64,000 nucleotides of DNA from Macrostomum lignano (taxonomy: Eukaryota). Positions 17,123-41,699 of the stretch are shown one piece after another. The translations under genes and the position numbers were made by a program. The notes beneath the pieces are model-generated. The model searched no databases. It was not told the DNA's origin and saw nothing but the letters and a program-made list of their open reading frames with translations. The stretch is from contig NIVC01000930.1 of NCBI GenBank assembly GCA_002269645.1, forward strand, positions 248,001-312,000, in the 5' to 3' direction. Position 1 is the stretch's first letter, and every line of letters starts with the position of its first letter.

Positions 17123-17761
17123 GAGACGACGCACGCTTATCTCTCTAGGATACTGCTGTGCAATAGAATCGAAAAAGTTCTCTATTCTATGAAATTCAGC
17201 CCACAGCCATAGGGCCGCTCACTGCTCACCCTAATCCTTGCTAAAGAAAAGCTTTCTCTCTTCATTTGTGCACGCGCAACGCTGCATGCTGCAGCTCAGA
17301 ACAGATTCTGAGTCGAGAGAGGTGCAGTCAGTCAGTGGGATAAATTGGGCAAAATCCCAAGCAGACACTTGGTCAAGAACGGAGCAGAGAGAGAGAGAGA
17401 TAGAGATGGAGGCGGAGACTGCGGCACAGCCTGCAAAATGAGATCAGCCGTCCAGTGCGTTACATTTGGGATAAAGCAGGGACCAAGGAGAAGAGGATTT
17501 TGCCTTCTTCGGCTCTCGACTCGGCCAGGGGACTCGATGGATTGCCGGGGGATCGGCATGATGAGCGAGCACTGCAAATTACATACATGAGGGACGCGCC
17601 GGCACTTCAAAGGGGAGTGGATGGGCCAAGGGGAAGATGAAGCAGTCACAGTGTAGGGGAGCCTTTGCCTGAGAGATTACTAATAACAGGACAATCAAAT
17701 GATAGGCTTTGCCGTGAGGACTGGACGAAGTTCCCAAGGAGGAAGATTAGAGAGATGGGAA

Positions 17762-18670
17762 TACTGGGTTTACCGGGTGCTGGGTTTACCGGTTGCTGGG
17801 TTTACCGGGTACTGCTGGGTTTACCGGTTGCTGCTGGGTTTACCGGGTACTGCTGGGTTTACCGGGTACTGCTGGGTTTACCGAGTGCTGGGTTTACCGG
17901 GTGCTACTGGGTTTACCGGGTACTGCTGGGTTTACCGGGTACTGCTGGGTTTACCGAGTGCTGCTAGGTTTACCGGGTACTGCTGGGTTTACCGAGTGCT
18001 GCTGGGTTTACCGGTTGCTGCTGGGTTTACTGGGTGCTGTTGGGTTTACCAAGTTCTGCTGGGCTTACCGGGTGTTGTTGGGTTTACCGGGTGCTGTGTT
18101 TACCCGATGCTGGGTTTACCGGGTGTTGCTGGGTTTACCGGGTACTGCTGGGTTTACCGGGTACTGCTGGGTTTACCGGGTGTTGCTGGGTTTACCGGGT
18201 GTTGCTGGGTTTACCGGGTGTTGCTGGGTTTACCGGGTGTTGCTGGGTTTACCGGGTGTTGCTGGGTTTACCGGGTGTTGCTGGGTTTACTGGGTGTTGC
18301 TGGGTTTACCGGGTGCTGCTGGGTTTACCGGGTGCTGCTGGGTTTACCGGGTGCTGCTGGGTTTACCGGGTGCTGCTGGGTTTACCGGGTGCTGCTGGGT
18401 TTACCGGGTGCTGCTGGGTTTACCGGGTGCTGCTGGGTTTACCGGGTGCTGCTGGGTTTACCGGGTGCTGCTGGGTTTACCGGGTGCTGCTGGGTTTACC
18501 GGGTGCTGCTGGGTTTACGGGTGCTGCTGGGTTTACCGGGTGCTGCTGGGTTTACCGGGTGCTGCTGGGTTTACCGGGTGCTGCTGGGTTTACCGGGTGC
18601 TGCTGGGTTTACCGGGTGCTGTGTTTACCCGATGCTGGGTTTACCGGGAACAGAGTTTACCCGGTGTTGG
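17762..18670 (+). repeat. 19-bp minisatellite (GGGTTTACCGGGTGCTGCT)n
   Basis: Direct reading; explains the overlapping ORFs in all three frames. Confidence 0.95.
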
Positions 18671-19084
18671 GTTTCGAGCTTACCTGGTCATCAGCTATTC
18701 TACAGTAGTAGAACTACGAGTACAAATCAATATTTTTGAGGAAACTTCAGAGAACTTGATCTGTGAAAGTTCATCGAATACTATGAACTGCTCAGCGAGT
18801 CGAGTGTAGAGTACGTTTGTGCATATCGTGACTTTTTCGGTCACTGCCTAATTTAGATTTTTTCTATTCTAACAGAACTACAGTTCGTGATTACTTGTCT
18901 GAGGTAGCATTGCGCACGCACTCTGAGGGTTTGGGTGGCAATTGGGGAAATGAGATATAAAGACTTATTTTTTTTAAATAATCAATTTCATTGTATGATC
19001 AAGATTATAGAGTGGGTGATACCCCGCAGGGAGAAGTGGAAAGAGAGGTGAGATATAGTGAAATGTGACACAGTAGAGAGTTTA

Positions 19085-19680
19085 TAGGAGATGAGAGGAG
19101 AGGAGAGGAGAGGAGAGGAGAGGAGAGGAGAGGAGAGGAGAGGAAAGGAAAGGAAAGTAGAGGAGAGGATAAGACTTAGAGAGGAGAGGAGAGAAGAGAA
19201 GAGGAGAGGAGATGAGAGGAGAGGAAAGTAGAGGAGAGGATAATACTTAGAGAGGAGAGGAGAGAAGAGGAGAGGAGAGGAGAGGAGAGGAGAGGAGAAG
19301 AGAGGAGGGGAGGAGAGAAGAGGAGAGGAGATGAGAGGAGAGGAGAGGAGAGGAAAGTAGAGGAGAGGATAAGACTTAGAGAGGAGAGGAGAGAAGAGAA
19401 GAGAAGAGGAGAGGAGAGGAGAGGAGAGGAGAGGAGAGGAGAAGAGAAGAGAAGAGGAGATGAGAAGAGAGGAGAAGAGAAGAGGAGATGAGAGGAGAGG
19501 AGAGAAGAGGAGAAGAGAAGAGGAGATGAGAGGAGAGGACAGGAGAGGAGAGAGAGGAGAGAGAGAGGAGAGGAGAGGAGAGGAGAGGAGAGGCGAGGAG
19601 AGGAGAGGAGAGGAGAGGAGAGGAGAGGAGAGGAGAGAGAGGAGAGAGAGGAGATGAGAGGAGAGGAGAGCAAGGGAGCA
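19085..19680 (+). repeat. (GAGAG)n polypurine microsatellite
   Basis: Direct reading. Confidence 0.95.
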
Positions 19681-20304
19681 GAGCAGTAAGGGAGAAGACA
19701 CAGGCAGCAGGGCAAATCAGAGCGAAGCGGGCAGGCCCTACCTATCCTTTCAATCCAACCCCAAGCTTCCAGCCAGCAGCGGTTCAATCGGTCTTCCCCT
19801 CTACCTTGCTGCAATTATTCTAACAAAATATTGCTGGCGGAGCAGAAGCAGCCAGTAGAGTTTAATAAGGAAAAACTTGGGCAGCAATTAATTTTAATGG
19901 CCCAAAGCCAAACCAACCCCCCTCGCTTCGTCTCAGCTGGGCCGCCAATTCCCCACAGTCAACTCAGCCCCCTCAGCCCAGAGCACTGAGCAGTCTTGGC
20001 TTTCTTAGACAACATGCAAATCCTTTTCTCCTTACCCGACGGGCTCAGGGTATCAATTCTGAACTCAGGGTCTTTGAACTGCCTCCCGTGTGACTGCGCA
20101 TACCAATGCTCTCAGCTCTGCCTCCGTTTGATCATAGCTAATGCTTCTTGCTTTGACAAGTTCATTCAGATATTTCATGCTTCAGAAGAACTTGTTTTCG
20201 CCTTGCCATTTGTTGCGAGAAAGTCTTCTGGTGCAGTTCTTTTTAGAGAGGGAAACCGGATAAAGCATGTGTTGGTTGTTTATCCACAAGAGAATTTTTT
20301 ATCT

Positions 20305-21595
20305 GATCTCTCCCCTCCTCTCCCATGTCTCCCCTCCTCTCCCATGTCTCCCTCTCCCATGTCTCCCCTCCTCTCCCATTTCTCCCCTCCCCTCCCATGT
20401 CTCCCCTCCTCTCCCACGTCTCCCCTCCTCTCCCATGTCTCCCCTCCTCTCCCATGTCTCCCCTCCTCTCCCATGTCTCGCCTCCTCTCCCATGTCTCCC
20501 CTGCTCTCCCATGTCTCCCCTGCTCTCCCATGTCTCCCCTGCTCTCCCATGTCTCCCCTGCTCTCCCATGTCTCCCCTCCTCTCCCATGTCTCCCCTCCT
20601 CTCCCACGTCTTCCCTCCTCTCCCACGTCTCCCCTCCTCTCCCACGTCTCCCCTCCTCTCCCATGTCTCCCCTGCTCTCCCATGTCTCCCCTCCTCTCCC
20701 ATGTCTCCCCTGCTCTCCCATGTCTCCCCTCCTCTCCCATGTCTCGCCTCCTCTCCCATGTCTCCCCTGCTCTCCCATGTCTCCCCCCCTCTCCCATGTC
20801 TCCCCTCCTCTCCCATGTCTCCCCTCCTCTCCCATGTCTCCCCTCCTCTCCCATGTCTCCCCTCCTCTCCCATGTCTCCCCTCCTCTCCCATGTCTCCCT
20901 CTCCCATGTCTCCCCTCCTCTCCCATTTCTCCCCTCCCCTCCCATGTCTCCCCTCCTCTCCCACGTCTCCCCTCCTCTCCCATGTCTCCCCTCCTCTCCC
21001 ATGTCTCCCCTCCTCTCCCATGTCTCGCCTCCTCTCCCATGTCTCCCCTGCTCTCCCATGTCTCCCCTGCTCTCCCATGTCTCCCCTGCTCTCCCATGTC
21101 TCCCCTGCTCTCCCATGTCTCCCTCCTCTCCCATGTCTCCCCTCCTCTCCCACGTCTCCCCTCCTCTCCCACGTCTCCCCTCCTCTCCCACGTCTCCCCT
21201 CCTCTCCCATGTCTCCCCTGCTCTCCCATGTCTCCCCTCCTCTCCCATGTCTCCCCTGCTCTCCCATGTCTCCCCTCCTCTCCCATGTCTCGCCTCCTCT
21301 CCCATGTCTCCCCTGCTCTCCCATGTCTCCCCCCCTCTCCCATGTCTCCCCTCCTCTCCCATGTCTCCCCTCCTCTCCCATGTCTCCCCTCCTCTCCCAT
21401 GTCTCCCCTCCTCTCCCATGTCTCCCCTCCTCTCCCATGTCTCCCCTCCTCTCCCATGTCTCCCCTCCTCTCCCATCTCTCCCCTTCTCTCCCATCTCTC
21501 CCCTCCTCTCCCATCTCTCCCCTCCTCTCCCATGTCTCCCCTTCTCTCCCATGTCTCCCTTCCTCTCCCATGTCTCCCTCTCCCATGTCTCTCTT
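20305..21595 (+). repeat. 19-bp polypyrimidine minisatellite (CTCCCATGTCTCCCCTCCT)n
   Basis: Direct reading; stop-free in all six frames, giving artefactual ORFs. Confidence 0.95.
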
Positions 21596-22014
21596 CCTCC
21601 CTATATCTCCTGAATAGAGGAACTGAATTCCCTCCATCTCTACAAAAATTCAAATATCGACTCGTTAACATTGTTGAAGAGACCAATTGGAGCTGAAGAT
21701 TGCTGCTGGTCTCGCAACCAATAACCAGGACCGGAGCAAGGACTGAGTTGCAGACCTATTGACCCAATTTTATCAAGTGGTTAATCTATCAACTAAGTTT
21801 GCTGCAAGGACTACAAGTGCTGCAAGTTGTTAAGTAGTCCTTGGTTTGCTGTTGAAGACGGCACAGAAACGAAGAATTGATCGAATATATCTGTCTTTTT
21901 CACCTGCTGCTGAAGAAAGTCCATGTAAATTTTGCTTTTTTTAAATGTCCTGTTGGGTCACGGGATTTTGAGACGCAAAAAACAGCAAGAAGATAATGTA
22001 GTGTGCAAAAGCTA

Positions 22015-22590
22015 GGGGAGAAGTGGAGAGAGGAAGAGAGAAGTAGAGAGAGAGAGAGACAAGTAGAGAGAGAGAAGTAGAGAGAGGAAGAGATAAGTAG
22101 AGGTCGAGAGAGAAGTAGAGAGAGAAGTAGAGAGAGAGAGAGAGAAGTAGAGAGAGAAGTAGAGAGAGAGAGAAGTAGAGAGAGAAGTAGAGAGAGAGAG
22201 AGAGAAGTAGAGAGAGAAGTAGAGAGAGAGAAGTAGAGAGAGAGAGAAGTAGAGAGAGGGAGAGAGAAGTAGAGGTCGAGAGAGAAGTAGAGAGAGAGAA
22301 GTAGAGAGAGGGAGAGAGAAGTAGAGGTCGAGAGAGAAGTAGAGAGAGAGAAGTAGAGAGAGGGAGAGAGAAGTAGAGGTCGAGAGAGAAGTAGAGAGAG
22401 AGAAGTAGAGAGAGGGAGAGAGAAGTAGAGGTCGAGAGAGAAGTAGAGAGACAGAAGTAGAGAGAGGAAGAGATAAGTAGAGGTCGAGAGAGAAGTAGAG
22501 AGAGAGAAGTAGAGAGAGGGAGAGAGAAGTAGAGGTCGAGAGAGAAGTGGAGAGGGAGAGAGTAGATAGGGGATAGAGAAGCAGAGAAGT
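22015..22590 (+). repeat. (AGAGAGAAGT)-type purine repeat
   Basis: Direct reading. Confidence 0.9.
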
Positions 22591-22998
22591 AGACAGCAAT
22601 CCTGCAGTGCTGGCGAATTTGCAGTCCAAGGCAAATAAGATTACAAAAACTCTTCCAAAGCTTTCAAATATATGCAGCGATCTCGACAAAGGAAATTAGC
22701 GATCGAACAGAAGAACTTTGCTCGATATCAGCTCTAGTATTTATTTTATCACTGGACAACCATTTTTTCAAGTGCGAACAGGTTCGAATATGTCTGCGGC
22801 TACGCAAGGTTAAATGTTTTAGTTAATTCGATAATTTTTACACAGACAACCTTCGAAGTGCTTCGCTTTCAGCTCGCATTGGGCCAAGTAGATAGGACTG
22901 AGATAAAAGTTCGACAGAGGGACAGGCGCACAACCTTGATTCCGCTTCGCGACAACCTATTCATTGAGACAGCGTGTTGGCAGGCAGCTGACTCTGCT

Positions 22999-25900
22999 TT
23001 AGTTTTCATTGACGCTTCGCTTCTTGCGGTAGGAGCTGCGATAGTAGCGGCTGTAGTACTCGCCAAGCAGAGTGCCCAGGTCCTTCTCGTTCATCGAGCA
23101 GTCGGTCTTGCAGGAGCGGATGCTGGACCCGCGGATGCCGAGGGCGGAGCTGACGCAGCACTGGCCTGGCGGGCAATCCGAGTCCACCTGGCAGTCGATG
23201 CGGCGTGGCATGCCGAAGTCGTAGTAGCGCGGCATCTCTCGCTCGCAGACGCCGCCGTATCCTGCGTAGTGTTTGATTGGTTGGTATTTTTAGCACAGGA
23301 GGGTTTTTCAGACGAGTCAGGGGGCAGAGAACGCAGAATGCGTTTGATTGGTTGCTATTTTTAGCACTCCCTCGACAAGTGAAAATCACGGGCTCTTCTA
23401 ATTGGTTGCTATTTTTAGCGGGGCAGGGCTACCCCTGAGCAAGGAAAATCTTTTTTGCTTGTTTCTATTTTTAGCTCAACAGTTTTTCTCCAGAAAGTAA
23501 AGTTTAGCGTTCAGTGTTTCTTTAATTGGTTCGCTAATTTTATGCCCTCGCTAAATTTAGGTTTTAAAAAATGGAAACCCAATGAAAAGGTTCCCGATTA
23601 TTGAATACTCGGAGCATTAAAAGTGCAAACTTACTAAAGATAGTCCATAAATTAAAATGGCCCATTGCAGTTCTCTATGAAAACACAAAACTTTCAGGCA
23701 AAAGTTGTCCCAGCCACTCAACAAACTGCATTTTATCCTTGGGATTCGAAATCCAATTCTGCAACCGGAAAACGGCGCCGCGCCCTTCCCAGTGCCACAA
23801 TTTGATCAGCTTAAGGAGGCTTTAAAATCCCCCCGATGGGACTTCAGAGTGCTGGGAATCGGCGACAGACGAGAAGGGAAGAGCGAGGATGAAGACTGGG
23901 AGACTCCCCGGTCTCATGGCAAACTTGGAATATTCGATAAGGCTGGGGAACAGCCCGCTGGGGATTCTGACTTGGGAAACGATTTCTCCTGCCGCACGGA
24001 ACCTCAGCTTTCAATGCTTCTTTGTTGCCAAGTAGGGCAGAGAATCTTCTTTTCGGGGAACTGCTCAGAATGCTCACAACTCTGCCATGCGCCCCCCGCA
24101 CCCAACGAAATAAAATGCCACTTCTAGCGGTTGCTAACTGAATTCTGGAGAAAGAGAATTTGATTGAGGGGAAAATGGTTGATTTTATGGACCGGGCCGA
24201 GCTGGGCGCCTCATCAATTTTCAGCTCCCCTGCCGCTGCTGCTGGCTTCTTAGCCGCCCAGCAGGAATGCAAAATGAGGAGAGCTGCAGTGGCGGCTCTT
24301 CTCCCCACAGAATAAAAATTGGCCAAGCAAAACAGAGAGAACTGGCCCCTCATTGCGTGGCGCGGAAATGTAAAAAAAGTCAGTGGCACAAGAAATTATG
24401 GCAAGAGATTTCTGGCAGCACTCTGGATGTGGCCGCTGAGCCAGCTGTGCAACATTTATTAACGAAGTTTTAAGTGGCAGCTTTTTTGGACCCAAAACTG
24501 CATGTGGATACTAAAAATAGACTTTATTGTAAATAGACATCCGCGATGGAAGTCTGGGTGGTGCATTGATGGGAACATATTGCAACGGTACTCATGTGGT
24601 TTAAAAATATCCCCAAAAGAAGCGCTCCGTATGGAAAGCTTTTAGAATTGGTATATTTATTTTTGTCTGGGTCCCCGATGTTGGCTAGATTAGCAATCCA
24701 TTCTATTCCTTCATCAGTGATGCTGGCTAGATTAGCAATCCATTCTATTCCTTCATCAGTGAGATGCTGGCTAGATTAGCAATCCATTCTATTCCTTCAT
24801 CAGTGATGCTGGCTAGATTAGCAATCCATTCTATTCCTTCATCAGTGAGATGCTGGCTAGATTAGCAATCCATTCTATTCCTTCATCAGTGAGATGTTGG
24901 CTAGATTAGCAATCCATTCTATTCCTTCATCAGTGAGATGTTGGCTAGATTAGCAAGCCATTCTACTCCTTCATCAGTGTGATGCTGGCTAGATTAGCAA
25001 TCCATTCTATTCCTTCATCAGTGATGCTGGCTAGATTAGCAATCCATTATATTCCTTCATCAGTGATGTTTGCTAGATTAGCAATCCATTATATTCCTTC
25101 ATCAGTGATGCTGGATAGATTAGCAATCCATTCTATTCCTTCATCAGTGATGTTGGCTAGATTAGCAATCCATTCTATTCCTTCATCAGTGATGCTGGCT
25201 AGATTAGCAATCCATTCTATTCCTTCATCAGTGATGCTGGCTAGATTAGCAATCCATTCTATTCCTTCATCAGTGTGATGTTGGCTAGATTAGCAATCCA
25301 TTCTATTCCTTCATCAGTGAGATGTTGGCTAGATTAGCAATCCATTCTATTCCTTCATCAGTGAGATGTTGGCTAGATTAGCAATCCATTCTATTCCTTC
25401 ATCAGTGATGCTGGCTAGATTAGCAATCCAATCTATTCCTTCATCAGTGATGTTGGCTAGATTAGCAATCCATTCTATTCCTCATCAGTGTGACGTTGGC
25501 TAGATTAGCAATCCATTCTATTCCTCATCAGTGTGATTTTGGCTAGATCAGCAATCCATTCTATTCCTTCATCAGTGATGTTGGCTAGATTAGCAATCCA
25601 TTCTATTCCTTCATCAGTGTGATGCTGGCTAGATTAGTAATCCATTCTATTCCTTCATCAGTGAGATGTTGGCTAGATTAGCAATCCATTCTATTCCTTC
25701 ATCAGTGAGATGTTGGCTAGATTAGCAATCCATTCTATTCCTTCATCAGTGTGATGCTGGCTAGATTAGCAATCCATTCTATTCCTTCATCAGTGTCACT
25801 CATCAGGGTCACTCACTCTTATACCCGTATCGGCAGACCAGGCCATCGCAGCACACCGTGTCCGAGTAGCAAAACGAGCCCTCAAAGCCACACTAAAAAG

Positions 25901-26150
25901 GTGCAAAAAGGTGAAAATCGCAAATGACGAATATCGAATATCTTCAGCACACACAGATCTCATCAGCGCAGAAACCGATATCAAATTTCAACGAATAGCT
26001 TATAGTTAGATCGAATATGATGATTCGATTGCAACTCACGTTGCTATCTGAGCCGCCGCCCATGATCCTGATGAAGCCCGCAGCCTCCCTAGGACCCATG
26101 CTGATCGACAGGGCGACAGTCAGAGCAATCAAAATGGTTGCAGCTGTCAT
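22999..26150 (-). CDS. Secreted Cys-rich protein, 149 aa (signal peptide + ICK/knottin-like module + prokineticin/colipase-like module + KKR site); exons 26040-26150, 25817-25892, 22999-23261
   Basis: Donors AAC|GTGAGT and A|GTGAGT, acceptors TTTAG| and CGCAG|; phases 0 and 1 join in frame: MTAATILIALTVALSISMGPREAAG...CGFEGSFCYSDTVCCDGLVCRYGYKRYGGVC...CQVDSDCPPGQCCVSSALGIRGSSIRSCKTDC...RKKRSVNEN. Confidence 0.85.
24685..25795 (+). repeat. 42/44-bp minisatellite in intron 2 of the Cys-rich gene
   Basis: GATGCTGGCTAGATTAGCAATCCATTCTATTCCTTCATCAGT, about 26 copies, ending about 20 bp from the donor. Confidence 0.95.
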
Positions 26151-26347: not shown

Positions 26348-26353
26348 TTTATA
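26348..26353 (-). promoter_or_regulatory. Candidate TATA box (TATAAA) of the Cys-rich secreted protein gene
   Basis: GGGGTATAAACCC on the minus strand, about 200 bp upstream of the ATG. Confidence 0.4.
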
Positions 26354-26459: not shown

Positions 26460-27285
26460 CCATGATACTCTAACATCATGAGACTCATTATCATGAGAGT
26501 TGAGCATCAGGAGACTTCAGTATCATGAGAGTCTAGCATCATGAGAGTCTAGCATCATGAGACTTCAGTATCAAGAGAGTCTAGCATCATGAGAATCAAG
26601 CATCATGAGAGTCTAGCATCATGACAGTCTAGCATCATGAGACTTCAGTATCATGAGAGTCTAGCATCAGGAGACTTCAGTATCATGAGAGTTGAGAATC
26701 AGGAGACTTCAGTATCATGAGAGTTGAGCATCAGGAGACTTCAGTACCATGAGAGTTGAGAATCAGGAGACTTCAGTATCATGAGAGTTGAGAATCAGGA
26801 GACTCCAGTATCTTGAGAGTTGAGCATCAGGAGACTTTAAGAAACGGACACTTCTGTAGCATAAGACTTCAGTAATATACACTTCAGTATCATGAGACTC
26901 CAGTATCTTGAGAGTTGAGCATCAGGAGACTTTAAGAAACGGACACTTCTGTAGCATAAGACTTCAGTAATATACACTTCAGTATCATGAGACTCCAGTA
27001 TCTTGAGAGTTGAGCATCAGGAGACTTTAAGAAACGGACACTTCTGTAGCATAAGACTTCAGTAATATACACTTCAGTATCATGAGACTCCAGTATCTTG
27101 AGAGTTGAGCATCAGGAGACTTTAAGAAACGGACACTTCTGTAGCATAAGACTTCAGTAATATACACTTCAGTATCATGAGACTCCAGTATCTTGAGAGT
27201 TGAGCATCAGGAGACTTTAAGAAACGGACACTTCTGTAGCATAAGACTTCAGTAATATACACTTCAGTATCATGAGACTTCAGTG
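26460..27285 (+). repeat. Compound minisatellite: ~16/25-bp CATCATGAGA units grading into ~5 copies of a 95-bp unit
   Basis: GAGACTTTAAGAAACGGAC recurs at 26831, 26926, 27021 (period 95). Confidence 0.9.
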
Positions 27286-28179
27286 AACAAACACCAGTCA
27301 CTTCAGCAACAGACACTTGAACAGCCAAGCCTTTTTCAACCAAACATGCAAATACCTTTTCCATGGGATGCTAGCTAATGCAGTCTGTGTTGATTAATAA
27401 ATCAGACATATGCAGTTTCATGCACACGGTTCTGTATCCGATCCGCCCCAGCTTCATTCCTTTAGCGCGTAATTACGCACACAGCGAATGCAAAGGGAGA
27501 ACGACGGCCACAAAGGACCAAAAATCGATGACCTGAATCGAAAATTTTTCTCTCTAGAAGTCCTTCTCCAAGCACACCAGGCCAATGCTTGGTCGATGCA
27601 GATACAGCTACACCCGGTCTCTGTGATACATACAGGGCCATATATTATTTTCCCACAGCAAAGCAACAATTAGAGCTAGAATGGTTGACAGGTGAGAATT
27701 CTCTCACAAAGAAAAATTGTGTATCATGAAATATTCATTAACACTAAACACTACACTATTATGATTATTTATTGCATTCTGTTGTAAGGGAAACAAACAG
27801 ACAGCAGTGCTGCATTTGGCAACTAATAATATTTACTCTTTCCATTTCATGCCATCTGCATATTTATTGATTTGTATTATTATTGAACAGTCGGATACAG
27901 TAAAACTCATAAGACAATGGCAGTACAGACCGACCATACAAGACAAACAGCAGGCATTTGGCGTAAAGCAAAACAAGAAAACAAGAGGATTACAAAACAA
28001 GACATATTATAATTGCGACAACAAATTTGAATAGTGTTTAGCTGCATATTTTACCAATAGAACAATATTTATTGTTTATAATTACAGTCAAACATTGGAA
28101 TTTTGTTGATTATTGGACACATTGAGAATCCAAACGCAATGCACATTTTCTATATTTGGAATTTTGCTTATGGGGAGAT

Positions 28180-29496: not shown

Positions 29497-33384
<3,888 letters not shown>

Positions 33385-33895
33385 CTGCAATTTATTTGCG
33401 TTTAGATCGAGAATTTTTCATTATATATTCTATACTGGCCTACTTATAAACTTACTAAGTAGTGTAAATAGAGTTTTATCTATTATTTAGCTAAATACAG
33501 AAAATCCATAGCTAGGTTAACAGATTCAGCAAAATGTCGGGACCATTTATCGAATTAAAAGCTACTAATTTAATTCAGATAAATAGCAAATTTCAATCCG
33601 CGAATTAGTCCCAGGCAGAACCATATTTTTTATAATCTGGCACGCAATCTACTCCCGAACTTACTCCACAATGCTAACAGGAGTAACGGGTTTTAATTTA
33701 TTTTTGCGTGCATATTCGTGGCTTCAATTCGTTAATATTTTACTTTTTTCTTGGCTTTAGATCTTTACTGACAACAATAACATATTTTTATGTAATCACT
33801 ATTTCATATTGGAAGACAAATTTATTTGAACTCATGGCACGCAGCCACAGCGTGTGTTGCAGCGGTGTGGAATGTTAAAACAAGCGGAAGCTCCC

Positions 33896-34461: not shown

Positions 34462-37400
34462 TCACGACACCAGCTTATCGGTGGTCAGCCAGATTGCAGC
34501 TAAGCCGGATGAAGCAGCGATCAGCAGCCACTTGGACCAGCTGGCAGCACTGAACAGCCCGCTAGCGCCATTACAGCCGTGCTTATTTTTGCAATGACAA
34601 TAGCGCATCTTCACTCGCAGAGTGCCCAGCCGTTCGGTGCACCAGCGGCCCTCCTCTTGGCCAATTTCGCCGTGCACCGCGCAGTCGCGAATGTACCGCC
34701 GATCCCAGGCGCCGTCGAAATAGGCTGGCGAGGGGGGGGGTTGCGGTCGGCGGGGTCACTGATTAATACTAATTTGATTTCTATAAGTATATTGCACAAC
34801 TGATGCTACGCAACTCTTACTTAAAGACGAGTGGCCCCTATAGATATGACATTCAACATTTTCTAGACATGAAATTCCTCAGTTCCAGACACAATCAGAT
34901 CCCCCATTTGTAGACATCATGACATTTCTCATTTCTAGACATCATGACATTATCCATTTCTAGACAAGACATTCCTCATTTCTAGACATCATGACATTAT
35001 CCATTTTTAAACAAGACATTCCTCATTTCTAGACATCATGACATTATCCATTACTAGACAAGACATTCCTCATTTCTAGACATCATAACATTATCCATTT
35101 CTAGACAAGACATTCCTCATTTCTAGACATCATAACATTATCCATTTCTAGACAAGACATTCCTCATTTCTAGACATCATAACATTATCCATTTCTAGAC
35201 AAGACATTCCTCATTTCTAGACATCATGACATTATCCATTTCTAGACAAGACATTCCTCATTTCTAGACATCATAACTGAAGTGACGGTTCGTTGGTTTG
35301 TGAACTGGCTAATTGTGTGGGATTTTTTTGCTTATAAATTTATTCCGTACTCTCTCCACTTATTCAGCCACTGGCATCAGTGAGATTCAATATTAAGAAT
35401 ATTTAAGCTATTGCTCTCATGTAGTGTGGAAAGGCGCTATTAGAGGCTTTGAGCTGGGGGAAAGAGCCGATAAATGAGCATTGGCTTTAAAAATACATTA
35501 AAATGCTTCCGTTTAACTTACTACTGAACTGAAAGTAGCTTGCACGCTAATGTGCTGAGTGGCCCATTTTGTTTTTTTAGTATCTGTGATGTTTCATTAA
35601 GTAACTTTGACTATTCTACAAATATATCGCAGAATTCACACTCGTTATTAAAACACAATCAGTTCCTGACTTTCGAGTCACGTCAATGACATTACCCCAG
35701 TTCTAGACGTCTCATGACATTCCCAATTTATTGATACCATTACATTTCCCAGACATGAAATTTCGCATTTCTAGATAAGACATTGACTATTCTAGACATC
35801 ATGACATTGCCCCTAACTAAGTTGTACAAAGCAGACACTTACTCTCTTGAATAATTTTGCGACACATGGTGTAGTTCTTATCTCCGGGGCACGGCTCAAT
35901 CAGTCTGGTCCGATTGTCAAAGAAGTCGGCACAGCGATGGTCCAGGAATGAGTTGCAGATGTAGCAGTGGAAGACTGTGTTGTTAGTCATGGCTAAATAA
36001 GGATTAAAAGAATTGAATAATTTGTATGACATTGCTGTATTAGTTTAGAATTAGTTATACACAATTTGGCCTACAGTTTATATAATTTATAATCATGAGA
36101 TTAGTTCCATATTTTTGTATATTGCTTCTCTGTAGTCTATAGTCAAAATGGCTTAAAATTAAATATAGTTTGCATTAATAATATAATACAAATAAGCTAC
36201 AAATGTACATAGAGGGCTATGGCCTAAGCTTGAAAAAATTGCACATTCATAAATTTGGGGTTAAATTGGAATCATGGCCTGGGTCTGCTTGTACAACTAA
36301 TTCCTTTGGGAGATAGCTCCCCAAGACACATGACTAATGATAATAAAGTTAAATCCATTATACATGACCATGTGTATACATAAACAATACACATCTATGT
36401 ACTTGCATGTCGATTTAAGGGAGCTGGAAATTTGGACAATGAATGCCTCTTGCCAGTTTGAAAATTGTTGCTTAGAGTTTGCTTAAAGATCACTAGTCTC
36501 AAAAAAACAAAAATTTGTTAAACTCTTTCTTAGAAAAAATAAATTAAATGCCAATAAGCTATACTCTTGATAACATTTAAGTGGAAATGATAAAAATTAA
36601 TACAAAAATATAAATTTAAAAATATGCATATATTTGCTATTATTAAAATTTTACCTTGTTCAAATGTCAAATGTTCCAATTTGGTTTTTTAGCAAAGCAA
36701 ATGATTATATGAAATCTCTGGAATTTAGGACTCAAATTGGTTGGGTGGTAAGGGCTAAAGTTAATATGAATGTTTTCACTTTTAAGGGGAGCTTAATTAG
36801 ATCGCTAGGGTAGGGGACTGAGATGGGATTAGGATATTAGAGATAAAATATATGAGCTAAGATGAATATTTTCATTTTGTGAGAGCCAAAGGGAGCTCTT
36901 AAGTCTCTAGAATTGGGGACTCAAGCAACAAAGACAGAAATTTTTGACACTATATGTTCATTAATCAAGAGGTTCAAGTTAATATATGTTTTCACTTACA
37001 ATACAAAGGGAGCTCTTAAGTCCCCAGGGACAAGGACTCAAACAAAATTTTTGACACCATATGCAAATGATTAGGATGATGAGGGGCTTAAGTTAAGATG
37101 AATGAATCCAATGGAGAAGCCCCCTAGCATCTATCACTATCAAAGAAGGCTAGATTGCAAAGGAAAGAAGGCTTCTTAGAAATCAACTAATGAGTAGGCC
37201 ATTGCCCTTGCAGATCTTGGTAAGAATAAGAGATTTTGTTACTTTGGCTATTTAACAATATGAGAAAAGGAGAAAGGGAGAAAATAGTGAAAAGGGAAAA
37301 AAAGAAAGGAAAAAGGAAAGAAAGAAAGGAAATGGGGTGGAGAAAAGAGGAAAAAGATAAGAGGGGGAAGAAGGGCTAAAAAAGAATATTTGCCCTTGGC

Positions 37401-40400
37401 CTAGCCTATATAGTACCTGCAGCTTGAGCAGTACCTGCAGCTTGAGCAGTACCTGCAGCTTGAGCAGTACTAGCATTTTGTATAGTGGCTCAAAGTGCAT
37501 CCTTGTATAAAATGTGGCATTAATAGAGATCTGACAAAATCTCAATCTCACAATTTGTATTGAAGATTTTTTTCTTTATTGAATCTTGATCAAAGCTCAT
37601 TTTTAAAAAGTGCCAAGAATCTAAGATATAAAATAAAGTAAAATAAAGAGCCCTAGGTTGAATACAAATATTTTGAATACAATATAGATAACCTAGACCA
37701 ATATAAACATATTGAATTTAAAAAAAAATCATATTAGTGCCAAAAAATCAACTTATTTTAGTTTTACCCATACTAAGAGATTTAGCTAAGTGTTTGGAAA
37801 AATGATGCACCCCAAAAGTCTCATGTTTTTATGAATTAAAGATTGTGATTTTTAATAAAAGTGTATAAAGTTTACTTTTGCTTTATGTATATAAAACATT
37901 ATAGAAATGGAATTGGTATTTTAATTTTTAGCTTTGTTTTATTTGAATTAAATATCTTGAAGTCTCAATCAAATCTTGTATCATATCATCAAAGAAGTAT
38001 TAAATCTCAAATCTTAAAAATTCAATATTGTCTAATCTCTAGGCATTAGTCTTCCTGTTTTAGAGTACTGAACACTCCAAACACCATATATAACATGACC
38101 ACATAAATAGCATCCAGCTGCCTCTCTAATGTGTTATACTAAATATAGAAAGTTTATTAGCTATGGCTACAAATATAGATATAGGAAAAATTTGAGTATA
38201 ATTTAATAATGCAAACTTCCTAATGAAAGTGTTCTGTGTCAGCATTTACCATGGCTACTCAAACTTTTCTATTTGTTTTTTCTGTTCTTAGTCATATATT
38301 TGAAGTATATAATAAAACTTTATGCATTATATATTTTTATATTAATTTAAAAACTCAAAACTCTTTTATCACTAAACTAATTTTTATCAATAAGCATTTG
38401 TTTAATGATGACTTATATAGTTAAAATGTGTTATTTTTGGATTACAGTTGTTTTGGTAACAAAACTTTTTGGTGATAGTAATTGTGGTTACAAGCAGAAA
38501 ATTATTTGCTAATCATAATTGATATAAAACCTAAATTTCAGATACTTCTAAAATTGTAAAATATTTTTATTTAATTTTGCTTATTTATTTTTTATAGAGT
38601 TGCAATGTTTCAAATTTGTATTTTTCCAAATCTAAGATATATAGTATATTTCTCTGTCAGTCATGACTTTTGTCTATGTAGACTATGCTTTTTTCAAAGT
38701 TAGCATTTCACAGTGTTCACAATACTCAAAAAAGTATAGGTGAAAACTGATACTCCAATACCCTTTCTGAAAAAAAGTATTGTCAATACCTGAAAGTCTA
38801 ATACCTAAATTTGAGTATTGGTAATACCCTAATTCAGATATCTGGTTTTTGCAAAAAGAATGCTTAATGAACATAGATACATATAATTTAAGCCTTTCAG
38901 ACCTTTTCCTAGATTTTTATGGTGAATAAAGCAAGCTTAGCATTGTTTTAAATCACGAAGCCTTTAGTAAAACAAATAAAATAAAAAGTAACAAATGAAA
39001 ACCAACAGTTGCAATTGCCACTATAGTCAATCATTAACTATTTACTAGCCTCTATAGTCATTTTTCTTTATGCCTATCAGCACTGTCATTGTTTTAGTAT
39101 AGTGCAACAACCTGTCAGTCTGCAATTGGTGCACCTGTAGGCTTAACCTCAGCCTTTTTTTTGGTTTGAGCACACTTACATGTATACCAGACCAAATGCT
39201 TTAAGCTGAGATAGATACTTTAAAGCCTTACCTTAGATTAGGCAACACATCACCCCTCTACTCTTTATACATGTAAACCTAAGTAAATTGCGTTACTTCT
39301 CTTCCCTTTACTCAACTTGGCCTCCCAATATATACTTCCAAAATAGTAGATATATTTATTTATTGCTGTATGCATGTAGACATACACATATGTTTGTATA
39401 TGTACATATCATTTACTAAATTGCTTGTGTTACTAGTGTAACATTAGTGTATTTGCTATTGAAGAAATTGTAGAATCAATTGGCAATCAGTGACTGATAG
39501 TGTTATAGAACTTGCAGTATGATATTTGACTAAATAATATCATTTTAATGATAATTACTAATTATTATAAGCTAATTAATAAAGCATGTATAAGTGCAAG
39601 CTATTTTAAAAAGTTTAAAAAACTTGCTTTAAGATTGGAAATATTAATTATTTTAGCTTTATTGACCTAAAACTGAAGTATTTATCATTATTTTCTATAA
39701 AATTATGCAACTATTTCATTCTTTTTAACAAAATTTTGATTGATTGCATATTCAAAATTTTAAAAGTATTAGACTATTGCATATTGTGAAAAGTTGAAAA
39801 CTGTATTGGAAGTTACCAAAGTCCAATACCATAAAAAGTATTGACTTTCAATACTCTGATACCCAAAAAGTATTGCCAATAGTATTGGAATATTGGAGTA
39901 TTAGAGTATTGGAATATCAGAATTGTGCCCAACACTGGCATTTTATGATGAGGATCCTTGAATATATTTATAGTTGTGTCTAAATATTTTAAGATATTTC
40001 AAAATGATCTATACAAAAAACAATAATCAATATAATTATTTTTTTAAATTTCTTAAATACAATAACCCCCTACAAATATAAGTATTAAAGCTTTTGATGG
40101 ATTTTTAAATATATATTTACAAAATTAATCTTAATGAAACCTACAAACTACTATTTATAATGCTTCCCATCATTAAAATGACTATTATAGACATTGAATC
40201 TTCATTTTTTACAAAAGGTTGTGTGTCTGTCACAAAAGAAACTTATGACCAAAATGACTTGTCACTGAAATGACTGGCACCCATCACTTTTGCATTAAAA
40301 AGGATTACAAAATAATGTTGATCTTGTCATTTATTACTTTATAAGATAGGTCTACAAAGTTTTATAAATTGTATATTACTTGACCAGTTTTCAAAAGGTG

Positions 40401-40884
40401 TCTTTGTACTCATGCAAATGAGATTTATCTAATAAATAAAAAATACTTAAAACTATAAGTAACTTTCAAAATCTATTTGGAGCCCAAGATCTAAGACCAA
40501 ATGAGTATTTATATTATTAGGCTTATTATTAAGTCTAGTAATATGCTCTATGACTACAGGAACTTTTACAACTTTTTAAAGTCCTTAATTTTTTCAACTC
40601 ACTAAAATCGCTAAGTAACATAGAGATTTTGATATATGACAAAATTGCTATTGCTTCTGTACTAGCCTAAAATTTGAATTAAAAAATGCAACTACAAGGC
40701 AACAAATAGTTTGACCTCTTAACTTTTTGATAAAAATATTTCGGTGTCTAGTACCTTGTAAGCAATACTGATTTTTAATAGCTTGGTATGCAGAAAACTT
40801 ACATGGAATTCCCGATCCAATTCTAATTTGTGCTTGTGCAGACGAGGCTGCGAGCATGACTCCTACAAAAACAAGCCAAAACAT
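34462..40884 (-). CDS. Quiver/sleepless-like Ly6/uPAR three-finger GPI-anchored protein, 164 aa; exons 40803-40884, 35843-35992, 34462-34724
   Basis: Signal MFWLVFVGVMLAASSAQA; donors T|GTAAGT and A|GTAAGT, both phase 1; CYICNS...C...C...CRKIIQE...R...C...C...YCHC...CN motif; hydrophobic C-terminal GPI-type tail. Confidence 0.85.
34855..35275 (+). repeat. 47-bp (25+22) minisatellite with TTCTAGACA core; scattered copies to ~35810
   Basis: Direct reading. Confidence 0.9.
38711..39937. mobile_element. Non-autonomous hAT-like DNA element with decayed TIRs
   Basis: Ends CAGTGTT...AACACTG; flanking 8-mers GCATTTCA (38703-38710) and GCATTTTA (39938-39945); subterminal CAATAC/GTATTG repeats at both ends. 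Confidence 0.6.
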
Positions 40885-41699
40885 TCTTTAAGTGGATAAG
40901 TCTAGGCACAGGGCTGTAGAGCTGTAGAGAAAAAAACGTAAATATTAAATGCACACTAATTCTTATGAGCAGTTTTGAGTGATACAGGCGTTAAAGAAGA
41001 AGCTAGCCCTGAACTTTGGTTAGCCGGAACACATTAAACAAGGAAAAGTGTATTTTAATTTTATTCTTAATAAAAGAAATTAATTATTAACTTGCAAAAA
41101 TAGTTAATATAATTAAAAAGCTACAGGCTTCTGTAGAGTTAAAAACATAAAGAAGAGTTTATTTACAGTTTAATAAAAATCATTCGTTTTACCTTTTTGT
41201 CGTCGGAAATAAATGATCCGAATAGATTTTTTCATTGTTTCGTACCTTCAAGCGGGTTAAAAAATGTACAATTGGCGAATAACCTGGCCATGGCGAGCTG
41301 GTTGTTAAAATAAAGTTTTTAGACCTTAATTTACGTTGTCTCTAATAATAAGCTAAGTTTGCTGTTGTTCTTACGGAATTCTAAAGAACATCATATGGAG
41401 ACTTCCATTAATTGGGAAAAGGACTGGATGGCTCTTCCTTGTACCGATCCCAGCTTTTACAAACGTTACAGTAAATAATGATACTTTTGCTATCGTTGAA
41501 GAAGAAATTAAGTAAGTCGATCTATAATTTGAGTTAAAAGAATTCAGTCGATGAATTGAATGGATGCATGCATTCAACTTGAAAGTCCAGCTTTTACTAT
41601 CAATTGAAACGCAGAGAAAAAGTGCCTTGTTCGGTCATATAACCTGCGGTGACTCGTGCATATGGAGATTTATCTGGAACTTGTCGTGCGGGGGTGCGA

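What the first reader, a model, noticed from the sequence alone, without database searches (positions are those of the whole stretch)
22999..26150. Hidden three-exon gene for a secreted knottin + prokineticin-like two-module peptide precursor
The gene is invisible as a single ORF, but its splice sites join cleanly into 149 aa. Seen in sequence: a signal peptide, module 1 C-x6-C-x5-CC-x4-C-x10-C, module 2 C-x5-C-x4-CC-x14-C-x3-C, and a Tyr-rich tail with a KKR dibasic site. Established knowledge: module 1 spacing is the inhibitor-cystine-knot framework of conotoxin VI/VII and spider toxins, and module 2 starts with the spacing of the N-terminal half of prokineticin/AVIT/astakine (colipase fold). 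Inference: a toxin-like, antimicrobial or signalling peptide with an unusual domain fusion.
Basis: partly seen in the sequence, partly recalled or inferred. Interest (0 to 1): 0.75.

Follow-up and report, generated by a model that had tools for sequence, protein, structure and literature searches.

The report
Flatworm secreted two-module cysteine-knot protein gene
The three-exon gene is real and correctly read, but it is already annotated in the flatworm Macrostomum lignano as an uncharacterised protein; it encodes a small secreted protein of one knottin-type module plus a different six-cysteine module, from a family seen so far only in Macrostomum.

Summary
Exons 26150-26040, 25892-25817 and 23261-22999 (minus strand, GT-AG introns) join to 149 codons with the stated cysteine spacings.

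The gene is not hidden. The window is Macrostomum lignano assembly Mlig_3_7, and the protein is 100% identical to GenBank PAA53895/PAA74677/PAA82649 (hypothetical protein Mlig005172). That annotation was derived from RNA-seq. A contiguous 925-nt contig from another sample (59% identity) aligns in blocks that break at the exon borders.

An exhaustive HMMER search of 1.84 billion representatives found only Macrostomum relatives. These are three roughly 30%-identical paralogues, and the one whose locus I fetched has identical intron positions.

- **Module 1:** its profile matches solved inhibitor-cystine-knot toxins (remipede double-knot Xt3a, E=1.3e-5).
- **Module 2:** it shares only the C-x5-C-x4-CC start with prokineticins. 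There is no Pfam Prokineticin hit, six cysteines rather than ten, and no AVIT N-terminus. Its best relative is a tick salivary peptide (2NDI, E=0.006).
- **Relation between modules:** they are unrelated to each other.

The N-terminus and module 1 are strongly constrained (dN/dS 0.13) and the signal peptide is not, which is the reverse of typical venom peptides. I favour an endogenous secreted ligand, but function is untested. Interest is modest.

The parts
26348..26353 (-). TATAAA box, 203 nt upstream of the ATG; putative core promoter
   Evidence: Pattern scan. The promoter role is inferred only.
26076..26150 (-). Exon 1, codons 1-25: signal peptide MTAATILIALTVALSISMGPREAAG. Predicted cleavage is after AAG.
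   Evidence: Translation. The hydrophobic core and small residues at -3/-1 recur in all five family members just before the conserved aromatic residue. The cleavage site is inferred from the (-3,-1) rule. dN/dS is 0.70.
26040..26075 (-). Exon 1, codons 26-37: conserved mature N-terminus FIRIMGG, then GSDSN
   Evidence: GFIRIM is identical in the ortholog P0003 and similar in the paralogues: YLRLMGG, FIGTLGG, FSGIVSGGG.
25893..26039 (-). Intron 1, 147 nt, phase 0, GTGAGT...TTTTAG, immediately before Cys1
   Evidence: The paralogue Mlig031025 has an intron at the same position and in the same phase.
25817..25892 (-). Exon 2: module 1 Cys1-Cys5 (CGFEGSFCYSDTVCCDGLVCRYGYK plus the first base of R63)
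   Evidence: The L001 contig aligns at 25895-25816.
23262..25816 (-). Intron 2, 2555 nt, phase 1 (inside the Arg codon of a KR pair), GTGAGT...ACGCAG
   Evidence: Mlig031025 has the same position and phase.
24677..25795 (.). 44-bp tandem array, about 26 copies, filling the 5' part of intron 2
   Evidence: Tandem Repeats Finder: 94% matches, score 1860. The gene is 3152, 3105 and 2714 nt long in the three genome copies.
23245..23261 (-). Start of exon 3: end of module 1 (R63 completion, then YGGVC68)
   Evidence: The sixth cysteine of module 1 is encoded in exon 3, so exons do not equal modules.
23194..23244 (-). 17-residue linker EREMPRYYDFGMPRRID
   Evidence: It has low AF2 confidence (residues 73-82 have pLDDT below 50), dN/dS 0.72, and variable length among paralogues.
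23098..23193 (-). Module 2: CQVDSDCPPGQCCVSSALGIRGSSIRSCKTDC (C-x5-C-x4-CC-x14-C-x3-C)
   Evidence: AF2 predicts a beta-hairpin with pLDDT 75. The profile matches tick salivary peptide 2NDI at E=0.006. Pfam Dickkopf_N is sub-threshold at E=0.026.
23029..23097 (-). Tyr-rich C-terminal tail SMNEKDLGTLLGEYYSRYYRSSY
   Evidence: LGEYYxRYYRxSYRKKRS is conserved in the ortholog, and a QYY/NYY motif is present in the paralogues. AF2 predicts a helix, at low confidence.
23017..23028 (-). RKKR, a putative proprotein-convertase site
   Evidence: It is identical in the ortholog. Paralogues end in RFGR or RKRFG, which are amidation-type ends. Cleavage itself is inferred.
22999..23016 (-). C-terminal pentapeptide SVNEN plus the TAA stop
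   Evidence: This segment is not conserved in the ortholog.
22839..22854 (-). 3'-UTR 16-mer GAAGGTTGTCTGTGTA, shared with the ortholog contig
   Evidence: Exact shared 16-mer between roughly 300-nt 3' UTRs. Its role is unknown.
22740..22745 (-). AATAAA, 253 nt after the stop; candidate polyadenylation signal
   Evidence: Pattern scan. Inferred only.

Best explanation
**Shown.** This is gene Mlig005172 of the flatworm Macrostomum lignano. It is a transcribed three-exon gene, present in three near-identical genome copies.

**What it encodes.** The product is a 149-aa precursor with these parts:
- a signal peptide;
- a conserved N-terminus (FIRIMGG);
- an inhibitor-cystine-knot-type module;
- a 17-residue flexible linker;
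- a second, unrelated six-cysteine beta-hairpin module of the C-x5-C-x4-CC type, the type seen in tick 'ixodegrin/prokineticin-domain' peptides and Dickkopf N-domains;
- a Tyr-rich tail ending at RKKR.

**Inferred processing.** After signal-peptide removal and convertase/carboxypeptidase trimming at RKKR, the product would be a neutral protein of about 12.9 kDa with six disulfides (F26-Y140), released through the secretory pathway.

**Inferred function, least certain.** It acts outside the cell as a stable protein ligand for a membrane receptor or ion channel. The knottin module and the conserved N-terminus would be the main binding determinants, and module 2 and the tail would add a second contact. 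I think an endogenous signalling role (hormone- or cytokine-like, comparable to non-venom knottin hormones) is more likely than a weapon.
For: **Gene and expression**
- The protein is identical to the GenBank annotation.
- That annotation comes from a genome-guided RNA-seq assembly (PMC5730564).
- An uninterrupted ORF in the ortholog contig aligns in blocks that break at the exon borders.
- The paralogue has the same intron positions and phases.

**Selection**
- The three genome copies differ from one another by 4 synonymous and 0 non-synonymous changes in the CDS, against about 94% identity in introns and flanks.
- Against the ortholog, dN/dS is 0.40 overall, 0.13 for the N-terminus plus module 1, 0.32 for the tail, 0.86 for module 2 and 0.70 for the signal peptide.

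**Fold**
- The module 1 profile matches solved ICKs, with Xt3a at E=1.3e-5.
- AF2 predicts a beta-hairpin in each module at pLDDT 70-78.
- Foldseek's top hits are Magi4, the draxin Cys-rich domain, DkTx and Xt3a, all at E>0.1.

**Processing**
- RKKR is conserved in the ortholog.
- Paralogues end in ...YYPRRFGR and ...MMRKRFG, which are Gly-(Arg) amidation-type ends.

**Endogenous role rather than weapon**
- The mature part is constrained while the signal peptide is not.
- There is one gene per genome copy, and no tandem expansion in the window.
- Net charge is 0 and pI is 6.4.
Against: - No expression site, mature peptide, disulfide map or target is known. Look-ups of the gene ID in the supplements of five M. 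lignano papers found nothing, and some stored files were cut.
- No family member reaches a Pfam gathering score.
- All Foldseek E-values are above 0.1.
- The whole-protein AF2 model has low confidence (pLDDT 59).
- dN/dS comes from a single species pair with dS around 0.7, and module 2 has only about 21 synonymous sites.
- The closest sequence and structure relatives of module 1 are venom toxins and horseshoe-crab antimicrobial tachystatins, which fits a defensive role equally well.
- The family is restricted to Macrostomum in the databases searched. That is more typical of gland secretions than of conserved hormones.
Confidence: 0.4

Rival explanations
1. Offensive or defensive secretion. On this reading the protein is a toxin-like two-module knottin released from epidermal, rhabdite or pharyngeal glands. 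It would act on the ion channels of prey or predators, or bind microbial or chitin surfaces as tachystatins do.
For: - The module 1 profile's best matches are venom ICKs: remipede Xt3a at E=1.3e-5, sea-anemone AMS3, and spider toxins. Horseshoe-crab tachystatins also match.
- Foldseek lists the double-knot toxins DkTx and Xt3a among its top hits.
- Sub-threshold Pfam hits are to Toxin_12 and Conotoxin_I2.
- The inter-cysteine loops of module 2 evolve quickly (dN/dS 0.86).
- The family is lineage-restricted.
- C-terminal amidation signals in the paralogues are also common in venom peptides (established knowledge).
Against: - The constraint pattern is the reverse of typical venom peptides: the signal peptide is variable (0.70) and the N-terminus plus module 1 is strongly conserved (0.13).
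- There is no tandem gene expansion. The window holds one copy, and the three genome copies encode identical proteins.
- The mature protein is neutral, unlike cationic antimicrobial peptides.
- To my knowledge Macrostomum has no described venom apparatus. I did not check this in the literature.
Confidence: 0.27
2. Reproductive or other gland product specific to Macrostomum. Candidates are a seminal-fluid protein from prostate gland cells, or a component of cement, shell or adhesive gland secretion. The Tyr-rich tail could then serve cross-linking or surface binding.
For: - The protein is small, secreted, cysteine-rich and restricted to the genus.
- Reproduction-related genes in Macrostomum are reported to evolve rapidly and often lack homologues (title and abstract of PMC7336406).
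- Tyrosines make up 11 of the 115 mature residues.
- Identity to the ortholog is only 59%.
Against: - Overall dN/dS is 0.40, with a strongly constrained N-terminus and module 1. That is not the signature of a fast-evolving seminal protein.
- Dibasic and amidation-type ends in the family point to convertase/PAM processing rather than a structural matrix protein.
- No positional expression data could be retrieved.
Confidence: 0.18
3. A true member of the prokineticin/AVIT/astakine (colipase-fold) cytokine family fused to a knottin, signalling through a prokineticin-receptor-like GPCR or an astakine-type receptor.
For: - Module 2 begins C-x5-C-x4-CC. Tick prokineticin-domain peptides have the framework C-X5-C-X4-C-C-X(9-13)-C-X9-C, and these are reported as similar to astakine and prokineticin (PMC2410133).
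- UniRef labels the protein 'Ixodegrin protein'.
- There are weak matches to Dickkopf_N (E=0.026), the Dkk1 colipase-fold domain (Foldseek E=1.7) and the draxin Cys-rich domain (probability 0.99 but E=0.19).
Against: - Pfam Prokineticin gives no hit at E<=10 for the whole protein or for module 2 alone.
- No prokineticin, MIT1, Bv8 or colipase chain appears at E<=10 in the PDB profile search or among the Foldseek hits.
- Module 2 has 6 cysteines, not 10.
- The last loop is x3, not x9.
- There is no AVITGA-type N-terminus next to module 2. Module 2 is internal, preceded by module 1 and a linker.
Confidence: 0.03

Closest known systems
Double-knot (tandem ICK) venom toxins: spider DkTx and Hi1a, remipede phi-Xibalbin3-Xt3a
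   Same: - Both are secreted proteins with two six-cysteine modules joined by a short linker.
- The module 1 profile matches both domains of Xt3a (whole-chain E=1.3e-5, each domain about 0.03).
- DkTx and Xt3a are among the Foldseek hits.
- Bivalent binding to one target is the known logic of this architecture (PMC9950431).
   Different: - In those toxins the two modules are homologous repeats. Here they are unrelated (hhalign probability 0.8%).
- Module 2 has a different framework (x14, x3).
- This protein also has a conserved 12-residue N-terminal extension and a 23-residue Tyr-rich tail.
- The source is a flatworm with no known venom gland.
- The constraint pattern is not venom-like.
- The shared architecture may well be convergent.
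Tick salivary 6.4-kDa 'prokineticin-domain' peptides related to Ixodegrin-2A (framework C-X5-C-X4-CC-X(9-13)-C-X9-C), and PDB 2NDI 'putative secreted salivary protein'
   Same: - Module 2 shares the C-x5-C-x4-CC start and the acidic 'DxDC(P/A)xxxCC' context.
- The module 2 profile matches 2NDI at E=0.006 over 35 of 42 profile positions.
- The tick framework is given in PMC2410133.
- This similarity probably explains the UniRef name 'Ixodegrin protein'.
   Different: - Loop 4 is 14 residues rather than 9-13, and the last loop is 3 rather than 9.
- The tick peptides are single-module, whereas here the module is the C-terminal half of a larger protein.
- I could not confirm that 2NDI belongs to that tick family. 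Its aligned sequence gave no Pfam hit.
- There is no RGD/KGD motif here.
Prokineticin / AVIT / astakine (colipase fold, Pfam Prokineticin)
   Same: Only the spacing of the first four cysteines matches (C-x5-C-x4-CC). Both also have a functionally conserved N-terminus directly after the signal peptide, which is an analogy only.
   Different: Module 2 has 6 cysteines, not 10. There is no Pfam or PDB sequence hit, no significant fold match, and no AVITGA. The conserved N-terminus here precedes the knottin module, not module 2.
Secreted cysteine-rich repeat proteins (SCREPs)
   Same: It is secreted and has two disulfide-rich modules in one chain, which is the general architecture class reviewed in PMC6262176.
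   Different: SCREPs are defined by repeats of the same domain. This protein is heterotypic.
Horseshoe-crab tachystatins (chitin-binding antimicrobial ICK peptides)
   Same: The module 1 profile aligns end to end with tachystatin B1/B2 and A (E=0.14-0.66), including the aromatic-rich hairpin before the last cysteine.
   Different: The E-values are weak. Tachystatins are single-module. The flatworm protein is neutral.

Membership tests
Inhibitor cystine knot (knottin), module 1 | Six cysteines in the order C-C-CC-C-C, with loop lengths in the ICK range | tested here: met
   The spacing is C-x6-C-x5-CC-x4-C-x10-C. The six cysteines are invariant in all five family members.
Inhibitor cystine knot (knottin), module 1 | Sequence similarity to proteins with a solved ICK fold | tested here: met
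   The PDB profile search gives Xt3a (7RZ3) at E=1.3e-5, AMS3 at 0.012, and then tachystatins and spider toxins.
Inhibitor cystine knot (knottin), module 1 | A curated Pfam toxin/knottin model reaching its gathering score | tested here: not met
   The best scores are Toxin_12 at 16.8 bits (cut-off 21) in the ortholog, and Conotoxin_I2 at 10.5-15.6 bits (cut-off 27).
Inhibitor cystine knot (knottin), module 1 | Disulfide connectivity I-IV, II-V, III-VI, with the third bond threading the ring | not testable with these tools
This needs NMR or mass-spectrometric disulfide mapping.
Inhibitor cystine knot (knottin), module 1 | C-terminal beta-hairpin carrying Cys V and Cys VI | tested here: met
   AF2 predicts strands 55-59 and 66-70 at pLDDT 71-78. 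This is a prediction, not a structure.
Prokineticin / AVIT / astakine (colipase fold), module 2 | Match to the Pfam Prokineticin model or to solved family members | tested here: not met
   No hit at E<=10 in Pfam or in the PDB profile search.
Prokineticin / AVIT / astakine (colipase fold), module 2 | Ten cysteines forming five disulfides | tested here: not met
   Module 2 has six cysteines in every family member.
Prokineticin / AVIT / astakine (colipase fold), module 2 | AVITGA-type N-terminus directly before the first cysteine (vertebrate prokineticins) | tested here: not met
   Module 2 is internal. The mature N-terminus is FIRIMGG, 12 residues before module 1.
Prokineticin / AVIT / astakine (colipase fold), module 2 | Colipase-type fold | tested here: inconclusive
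   Foldseek on module 2 gives Dkk1 CRD2 at E=1.7, Dkk4-N at E=3.6 and U21-hexatoxin at E=1.5, none significant. The draxin Cys-rich domain has probability 0.99 but E=0.19 with the whole model.
Tick ixodegrin-2A-like 6-Cys peptides | Framework C-X5-C-X4-CC-X(9-13)-C-X9-C (PMC2410133) | tested here: not met
   The first three spacings match. Loops 4 and 5 are 14 and 3 residues.
Tick ixodegrin-2A-like 6-Cys peptides | Sequence similarity to a family member | tested here: inconclusive
   2NDI, a tick 'putative secreted salivary protein', matches at E=0.006. I did not verify that it belongs to this family.
Double-ICK toxins / SCREPs | Two or more homologous repeats of one cysteine-rich domain | tested here: not met
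   Profile-profile comparison of module 1 against module 2 gives probability 0.8% over 12 columns.
Dickkopf N-terminal domain | Pfam Dickkopf_N reaching its gathering score | tested here: not met
   The score is 15.3 bits against a cut-off of 25, covering only residues 82-100.
Peptide-hormone / neuropeptide precursor (general class) | Signal peptide plus conserved basic cleavage sites and amidation signals | tested here: inconclusive
   RKKR is conserved in the ortholog, and paralogues end in RFGR or RFG. This gene has no Gly before RKKR, and no peptidomic data exist.

The most novel reading that the evidence does not exclude
Mlig005172 and its paralogues could be an endogenous flatworm hormone or cytokine family built as a heterotypic 'double knot': an ICK module plus a Dkk-N/ixodegrin-like module. 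Its receptor-activating N-terminus would be conserved, and in the paralogues the C-termini would be RFamide-type. That would make it a spiralian case of knottins used for internal signalling, with a two-module architecture reported so far only from arthropod venoms (PMC9950431).
Probability: 0.2. Interest if true: 0.55.

Novelty: new variant of a known kind. Interest (0 to 1): 0.3.

Why it matters
Tandem-knottin proteins are prized as bivalent ion-channel ligands. According to PMC9950431 they were known only from spider venoms before the remipede example.

This flatworm protein joins a knottin to a different cysteine module, and its constraint pattern looks like that of an endogenous ligand. 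That would widen the range of knottin architectures and the taxa that have them. It would also offer a tractable case for asking what such proteins do outside venoms, because M. lignano has transgenesis and RNAi.

The practical value is limited. The sequence is already public, the family is confined to one genus in the databases searched, and nothing yet ties it to a phenotype.

Tried and rejected
**Searches that found nothing useful**
- Pfam scans of the whole protein, of each module alone, and of four relatives. Nothing reached a gathering score and there was no Prokineticin hit.
- Single-sequence PDB search. It returned only GsMTx2 at E=0.66 and a Dumpy module at E=1.2.
- Exhaustive HMMER search of 1.84 billion representatives. 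It found only Macrostomum proteins plus one bacterial 3142-aa repeat protein (P0006). I regard that hit as spurious, because it matches the signal-peptide/N-terminal profile positions 16-58 repeatedly in a repeat array.
- Literature searches for 'Mlig005172', for Macrostomum with ixodegrin, for Macrostomum with 'inhibitor cystine knot', and for 2NDI with tick. All returned zero papers.
- Supplement look-ups of the gene IDs in five M. lignano papers, with no occurrences. A sixth paper held no supplementary files as text. At least one stored file was cut, so this says nothing about expression.
- A search for extra family copies in the window. There are none.

**Structure predictions of limited use**
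- The whole-protein AF2 model has overall pLDDT 59. Only the two modules are usable.
- Foldseek with module 2 alone gave its top hits to a bacterial phospholipase D fragment, which I rejected as meaningless.

**Readings rejected**
- ORFs inside intron 2 (23705-24127 on the plus strand and 23844-24389 on the minus strand) have no Pfam hit and are not treated as genes.
- The idea that the two modules arose by internal duplication.
- The older UniProt models P0002 (193 aa) and P0004 (380 aa, fused to the upstream gene). They look like mis-spliced or frameshifted versions of the same gene.


Full report
**1. The observation**

Read on the minus strand, the three stretches 26150-26040, 25892-25817 and 23261-22999 are 111, 76 and 263 nt long. 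They join to a 450-nt reading frame of 149 codons plus TAA. Both introns have strong GT-AG borders: GTGAGT...TTTTAG (147 nt) and GTGAGT...ACGCAG (2555 nt).

The twelve cysteines lie at 38/45/51/52/57/68 and 86/92/97/98/113/117. The hydrophobic N-terminus, the tail GEYYSRYYRSSY and the RKKR site are all there.

**2. Source and status of the gene**

- The protein is 100% identical over its full length to NCBI PAA53895.1, PAA74677.1 and PAA82649.1, 'hypothetical protein BOX15_Mlig005172g1/g2' of Macrostomum lignano. UniRef calls it 'Ixodegrin protein'.
- One of the three encoding loci, NIVC01000930.1 of assembly GCA_002269645.1, is base-for-base the window. Its annotated gene range is 3152 nt, identical to the finding's coordinates.
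- The GenBank annotation of that assembly was produced from a genome-guided RNA-seq transcriptome (StringTie/TACO with experimental boundary data; PMC5730564). The junctions therefore already rest on transcript evidence.
- There is independent support from a 925-nt contig of sequencing run SRR28338164. It carries an uninterrupted 154-codon ORF for a 59%-identical protein, P0003.
- Its nucleotide alignment to the window falls into three blocks. The two intron-flanking blocks end within 3 nt of the claimed exon borders: 23261 for exon 3, and 25895-25816 for exon 2.
- I did not establish that the run is RNA-seq, nor which species it comes from. An intron-free ORF with UTR-like flanks fits a transcript of a related Macrostomum-like species.

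The gene is real and the model is right, but it is not hidden.

**3. Family and distribution**

- A profile of the protein and its ortholog was scored against 1.84 billion cluster representatives, with no word index. Only five proteins reached E<=0.001: the query, three M. lignano paralogues (P0005/Mlig031025 at E=1e-12, P0007 at 4.5e-7, P0008 at 3.8e-6), and one bacterial giant repeat protein that I regard as spurious.
- A word-indexed search with the five-sequence alignment added only broken M. lignano models.
- All members share one layout: signal peptide; an aromatic-aliphatic N-terminal motif followed by GG; module 1; a variable linker; module 2; and a tail with a (Q/E/N)YY motif.
- All twelve cysteines are invariant within the module-by-module alignments.
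- The paralogue Mlig031025 has the same three exons. Intron 1 is in phase 0 immediately before Cys1. Intron 2 is in phase 1 inside the Arg codon of a KR pair, between Cys5 and Cys6 of module 1. The exons therefore do not correspond to the modules.
- No other family member lies in the window.

**4. What the modules are**

*Module 1.*
- A five-sequence profile matches solved inhibitor-cystine-knot peptides: the remipede double-knot toxin Xt3a (7RZ3, E=1.3e-5, both of its domains), sea-anemone AMS3 (0.012), horseshoe-crab tachystatins and many spider toxins.
- Pfam gives only sub-threshold Toxin_12 and Conotoxin_I2 hits.

*Module 2.*
- Its profile matches a 46-residue tick 'putative secreted salivary protein' (2NDI, E=0.006) and little else.
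- Pfam gives sub-threshold Dickkopf_N (E=0.026) and WAP hits. There is no Prokineticin hit even at E<=10.

*Structure prediction.*
- AlphaFold2 on the shallow five-sequence alignment gives a poor overall model (pLDDT 59). It does predict a beta-hairpin in each module at pLDDT 70-78, plus a low-confidence C-terminal helix.
- Module 2 alone reaches pLDDT 75.
- Foldseek against the PDB returns spider ICK toxins, the draxin cysteine-rich domain, DkTx and Xt3a for the whole model, all at E>0.1.
- For module 2 alone nothing is significant: U21-hexatoxin at E=1.5, Dkk1 at 1.7, Dkk4-N at 3.6.

*Relation between the modules.*
- A profile-profile comparison of the two modules finds no relationship (probability 0.8%). 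This is a heterotypic fusion, not a tandem repeat.

*The prokineticin claim.*
- The C-x5-C-x4-CC start is indeed the one reported for tick 'prokineticin-domain' peptides related to Ixodegrin-2A, and these are reported as similar to astakine and prokineticin (PMC2410133).
- That is the only feature of the prokineticin family met here. Cysteine number, N-terminus, Pfam model and fold match were all tested and not met, or were inconclusive.

**5. Selection and processing**

- The three genome copies differ from one another by four synonymous and no non-synonymous changes in the CDS. Introns and flanks are about 94% identical.
- Nei-Gojobori estimates against the ortholog are below. They come from one species pair and short segments, so they are indicative only.

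| Region | dN/dS |
|---|---|
| Whole CDS | 0.40 |
| N-terminal motif plus module 1 | 0.13 |
| Tail | 0.32 |
| Signal peptide | 0.70 |
| Linker | 0.72 |
| Module 2 | 0.86 |

- Small residues at -3 and -1 precede the conserved aromatic residue in all members. From the (-3,-1) rule I infer signal cleavage after Gly25, giving a mature N-terminus FIRIMGG.
- RKKR is identical in the ortholog. Two paralogues end in ...YYPRRFGR and ...MMRKRFG, which are classical amidation-type ends.
- The inferred mature product, F26-Y140, is 115 residues and 12.9 kDa, with pI 6.4, net charge zero, 11 tyrosines and 12 cysteines.

**6. Most likely function**

*Shown:* a transcribed gene for a secreted, disulfide-rich, two-module protein under purifying selection.

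*Inferred:* it is processed by signal peptidase and a proprotein convertase, and it acts extracellularly as a stable ligand.

I favour an endogenous signalling role (about 0.4) for four reasons:
- The mature N-terminus and the knottin module are the most constrained parts while the signal peptide drifts. This is the opposite of the conotoxin-type pattern (established knowledge).
- There is one gene per genome copy, with no tandem expansion.
- The protein is neutral.
- The family carries convertase and amidation signals.

Rival readings:
- **A defensive or toxin-like secretion (about 0.27).** This fits the identity of the nearest relatives and the fast loops of module 2.
- **A Macrostomum-specific reproductive or gland product (about 0.18).** This fits the narrow taxonomic range.
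- **True membership of the prokineticin family (about 0.03).** This is essentially excluded.

I found no expression data for this gene. Literature and supplement look-ups were empty, and some stored files were truncated.

**7. Comparison with what is known, and novelty**

- In architecture the protein is closest to the double-knot toxins (DkTx, Hi1a, Xt3a). PMC9950431 describes that arrangement as previously known only from spider venoms. It also falls near the broader class of secreted cysteine-rich repeat proteins (PMC6262176).
- It fails the defining feature of both, homologous repeats. It also adds conserved terminal extensions.
- The sequence itself is already public as a hypothetical protein. 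I therefore rate it a new variant of a known kind, with modest interest (0.3).

**8. Surroundings**

- Intron 2 is half filled by a 44-bp tandem array of about 26 copies. Gene length differs between the genome copies.
- A further 16/32/95-bp array lies at 26461-27289, just upstream of the TATA box.
- The next gene upstream on the same strand, at about 29.5-33.4 kb, has a TFIIS-type helical bundle and a C-terminal CCCH zinc finger. An older UniProt model wrongly fuses its end to this gene.

Noticed in passing
window 24677-25795: A 44-bp tandem array of about 26 copies (94% matches) fills the 5' half of intron 2. It starts 21 nt after the donor site. Gene length differs among the three genome copies (3152, 3105 and 2714 nt), and array copy number probably accounts for much of that.
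   Followed up: partly
window 26461-27289: A compound tandem array with periods of 16, 32 and 95 bp lies about 100 nt upstream of the gene's TATA-like box. The upstream flanks of L003 and L004 align with L002 at only 75-89% here, in many shifted registers.
   Followed up: no
window 22839-22854 (minus strand); L001 759-774: An exact 16-mer, GAAGGTTGTCTGTGTA, is shared by the 3' UTRs of this gene and of its 59%-identical ortholog. It lies about 145 and 177 nt after the respective stop codons. A chance match is very unlikely (roughly 2e-5 by my estimate). It may be a regulatory or 3'-end element.
   Followed up: partly
window 29497-33390 (minus strand): The neighbouring gene upstream on the same strand has a TFIIS/Med26 helical-bundle domain (above the Pfam cut-off), a long low-complexity middle and a weak C-terminal CCCH zinc-finger match, resembling PNUTS/PPP1R10. 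The UniProt model A0A1I8FAU1 (P0004, 380 aa) fuses its C-terminus to the knottin gene, which is evidently a mis-annotation from an older assembly.
   Followed up: partly
window 17700-22690: About 5 kb of long imperfect tandem repeats shows extreme strand asymmetry (GC skew +0.43, then -0.59). All six frames give 200-560-aa 'ORFs' of low-complexity sequence such as PLLSS, GETWERRGDMGE and CWVYRVLLGLPG. These are repeat artefacts, not genes.
   Followed up: no
window 30000-30680: A long (GTCT/CTGT)n-type microsatellite reads as endless 'SVCL' ORFs. It lies inside or next to the neighbouring gene.
   Followed up: no
window 25818-25820 / 23261 (codons K62-R63); L005: A Lys-Arg pair sits inside module 1 between Cys5 and Cys6, exactly at the phase-1 intron. 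It is conserved in the ortholog and in paralogue Mlig031025 but absent from the other two paralogues. If a convertase cut there, the product would be a two-chain, disulfide-linked knottin.
   Followed up: no
P0005, P0007 (M. lignano paralogues, not in the window): Two paralogues end in ...NYYPRRFGR and ...MMRKRFG, so they would carry C-terminal RF-amide after processing. That recalls flatworm FMRFamide-like and NPF peptide ends, on a 12-cysteine protein.
   Followed up: partly
window 36000-42000: GC content drops to 0.28-0.33 over about 6 kb, against 0.42-0.57 elsewhere in the window. I did not examine it.
   Followed up: no
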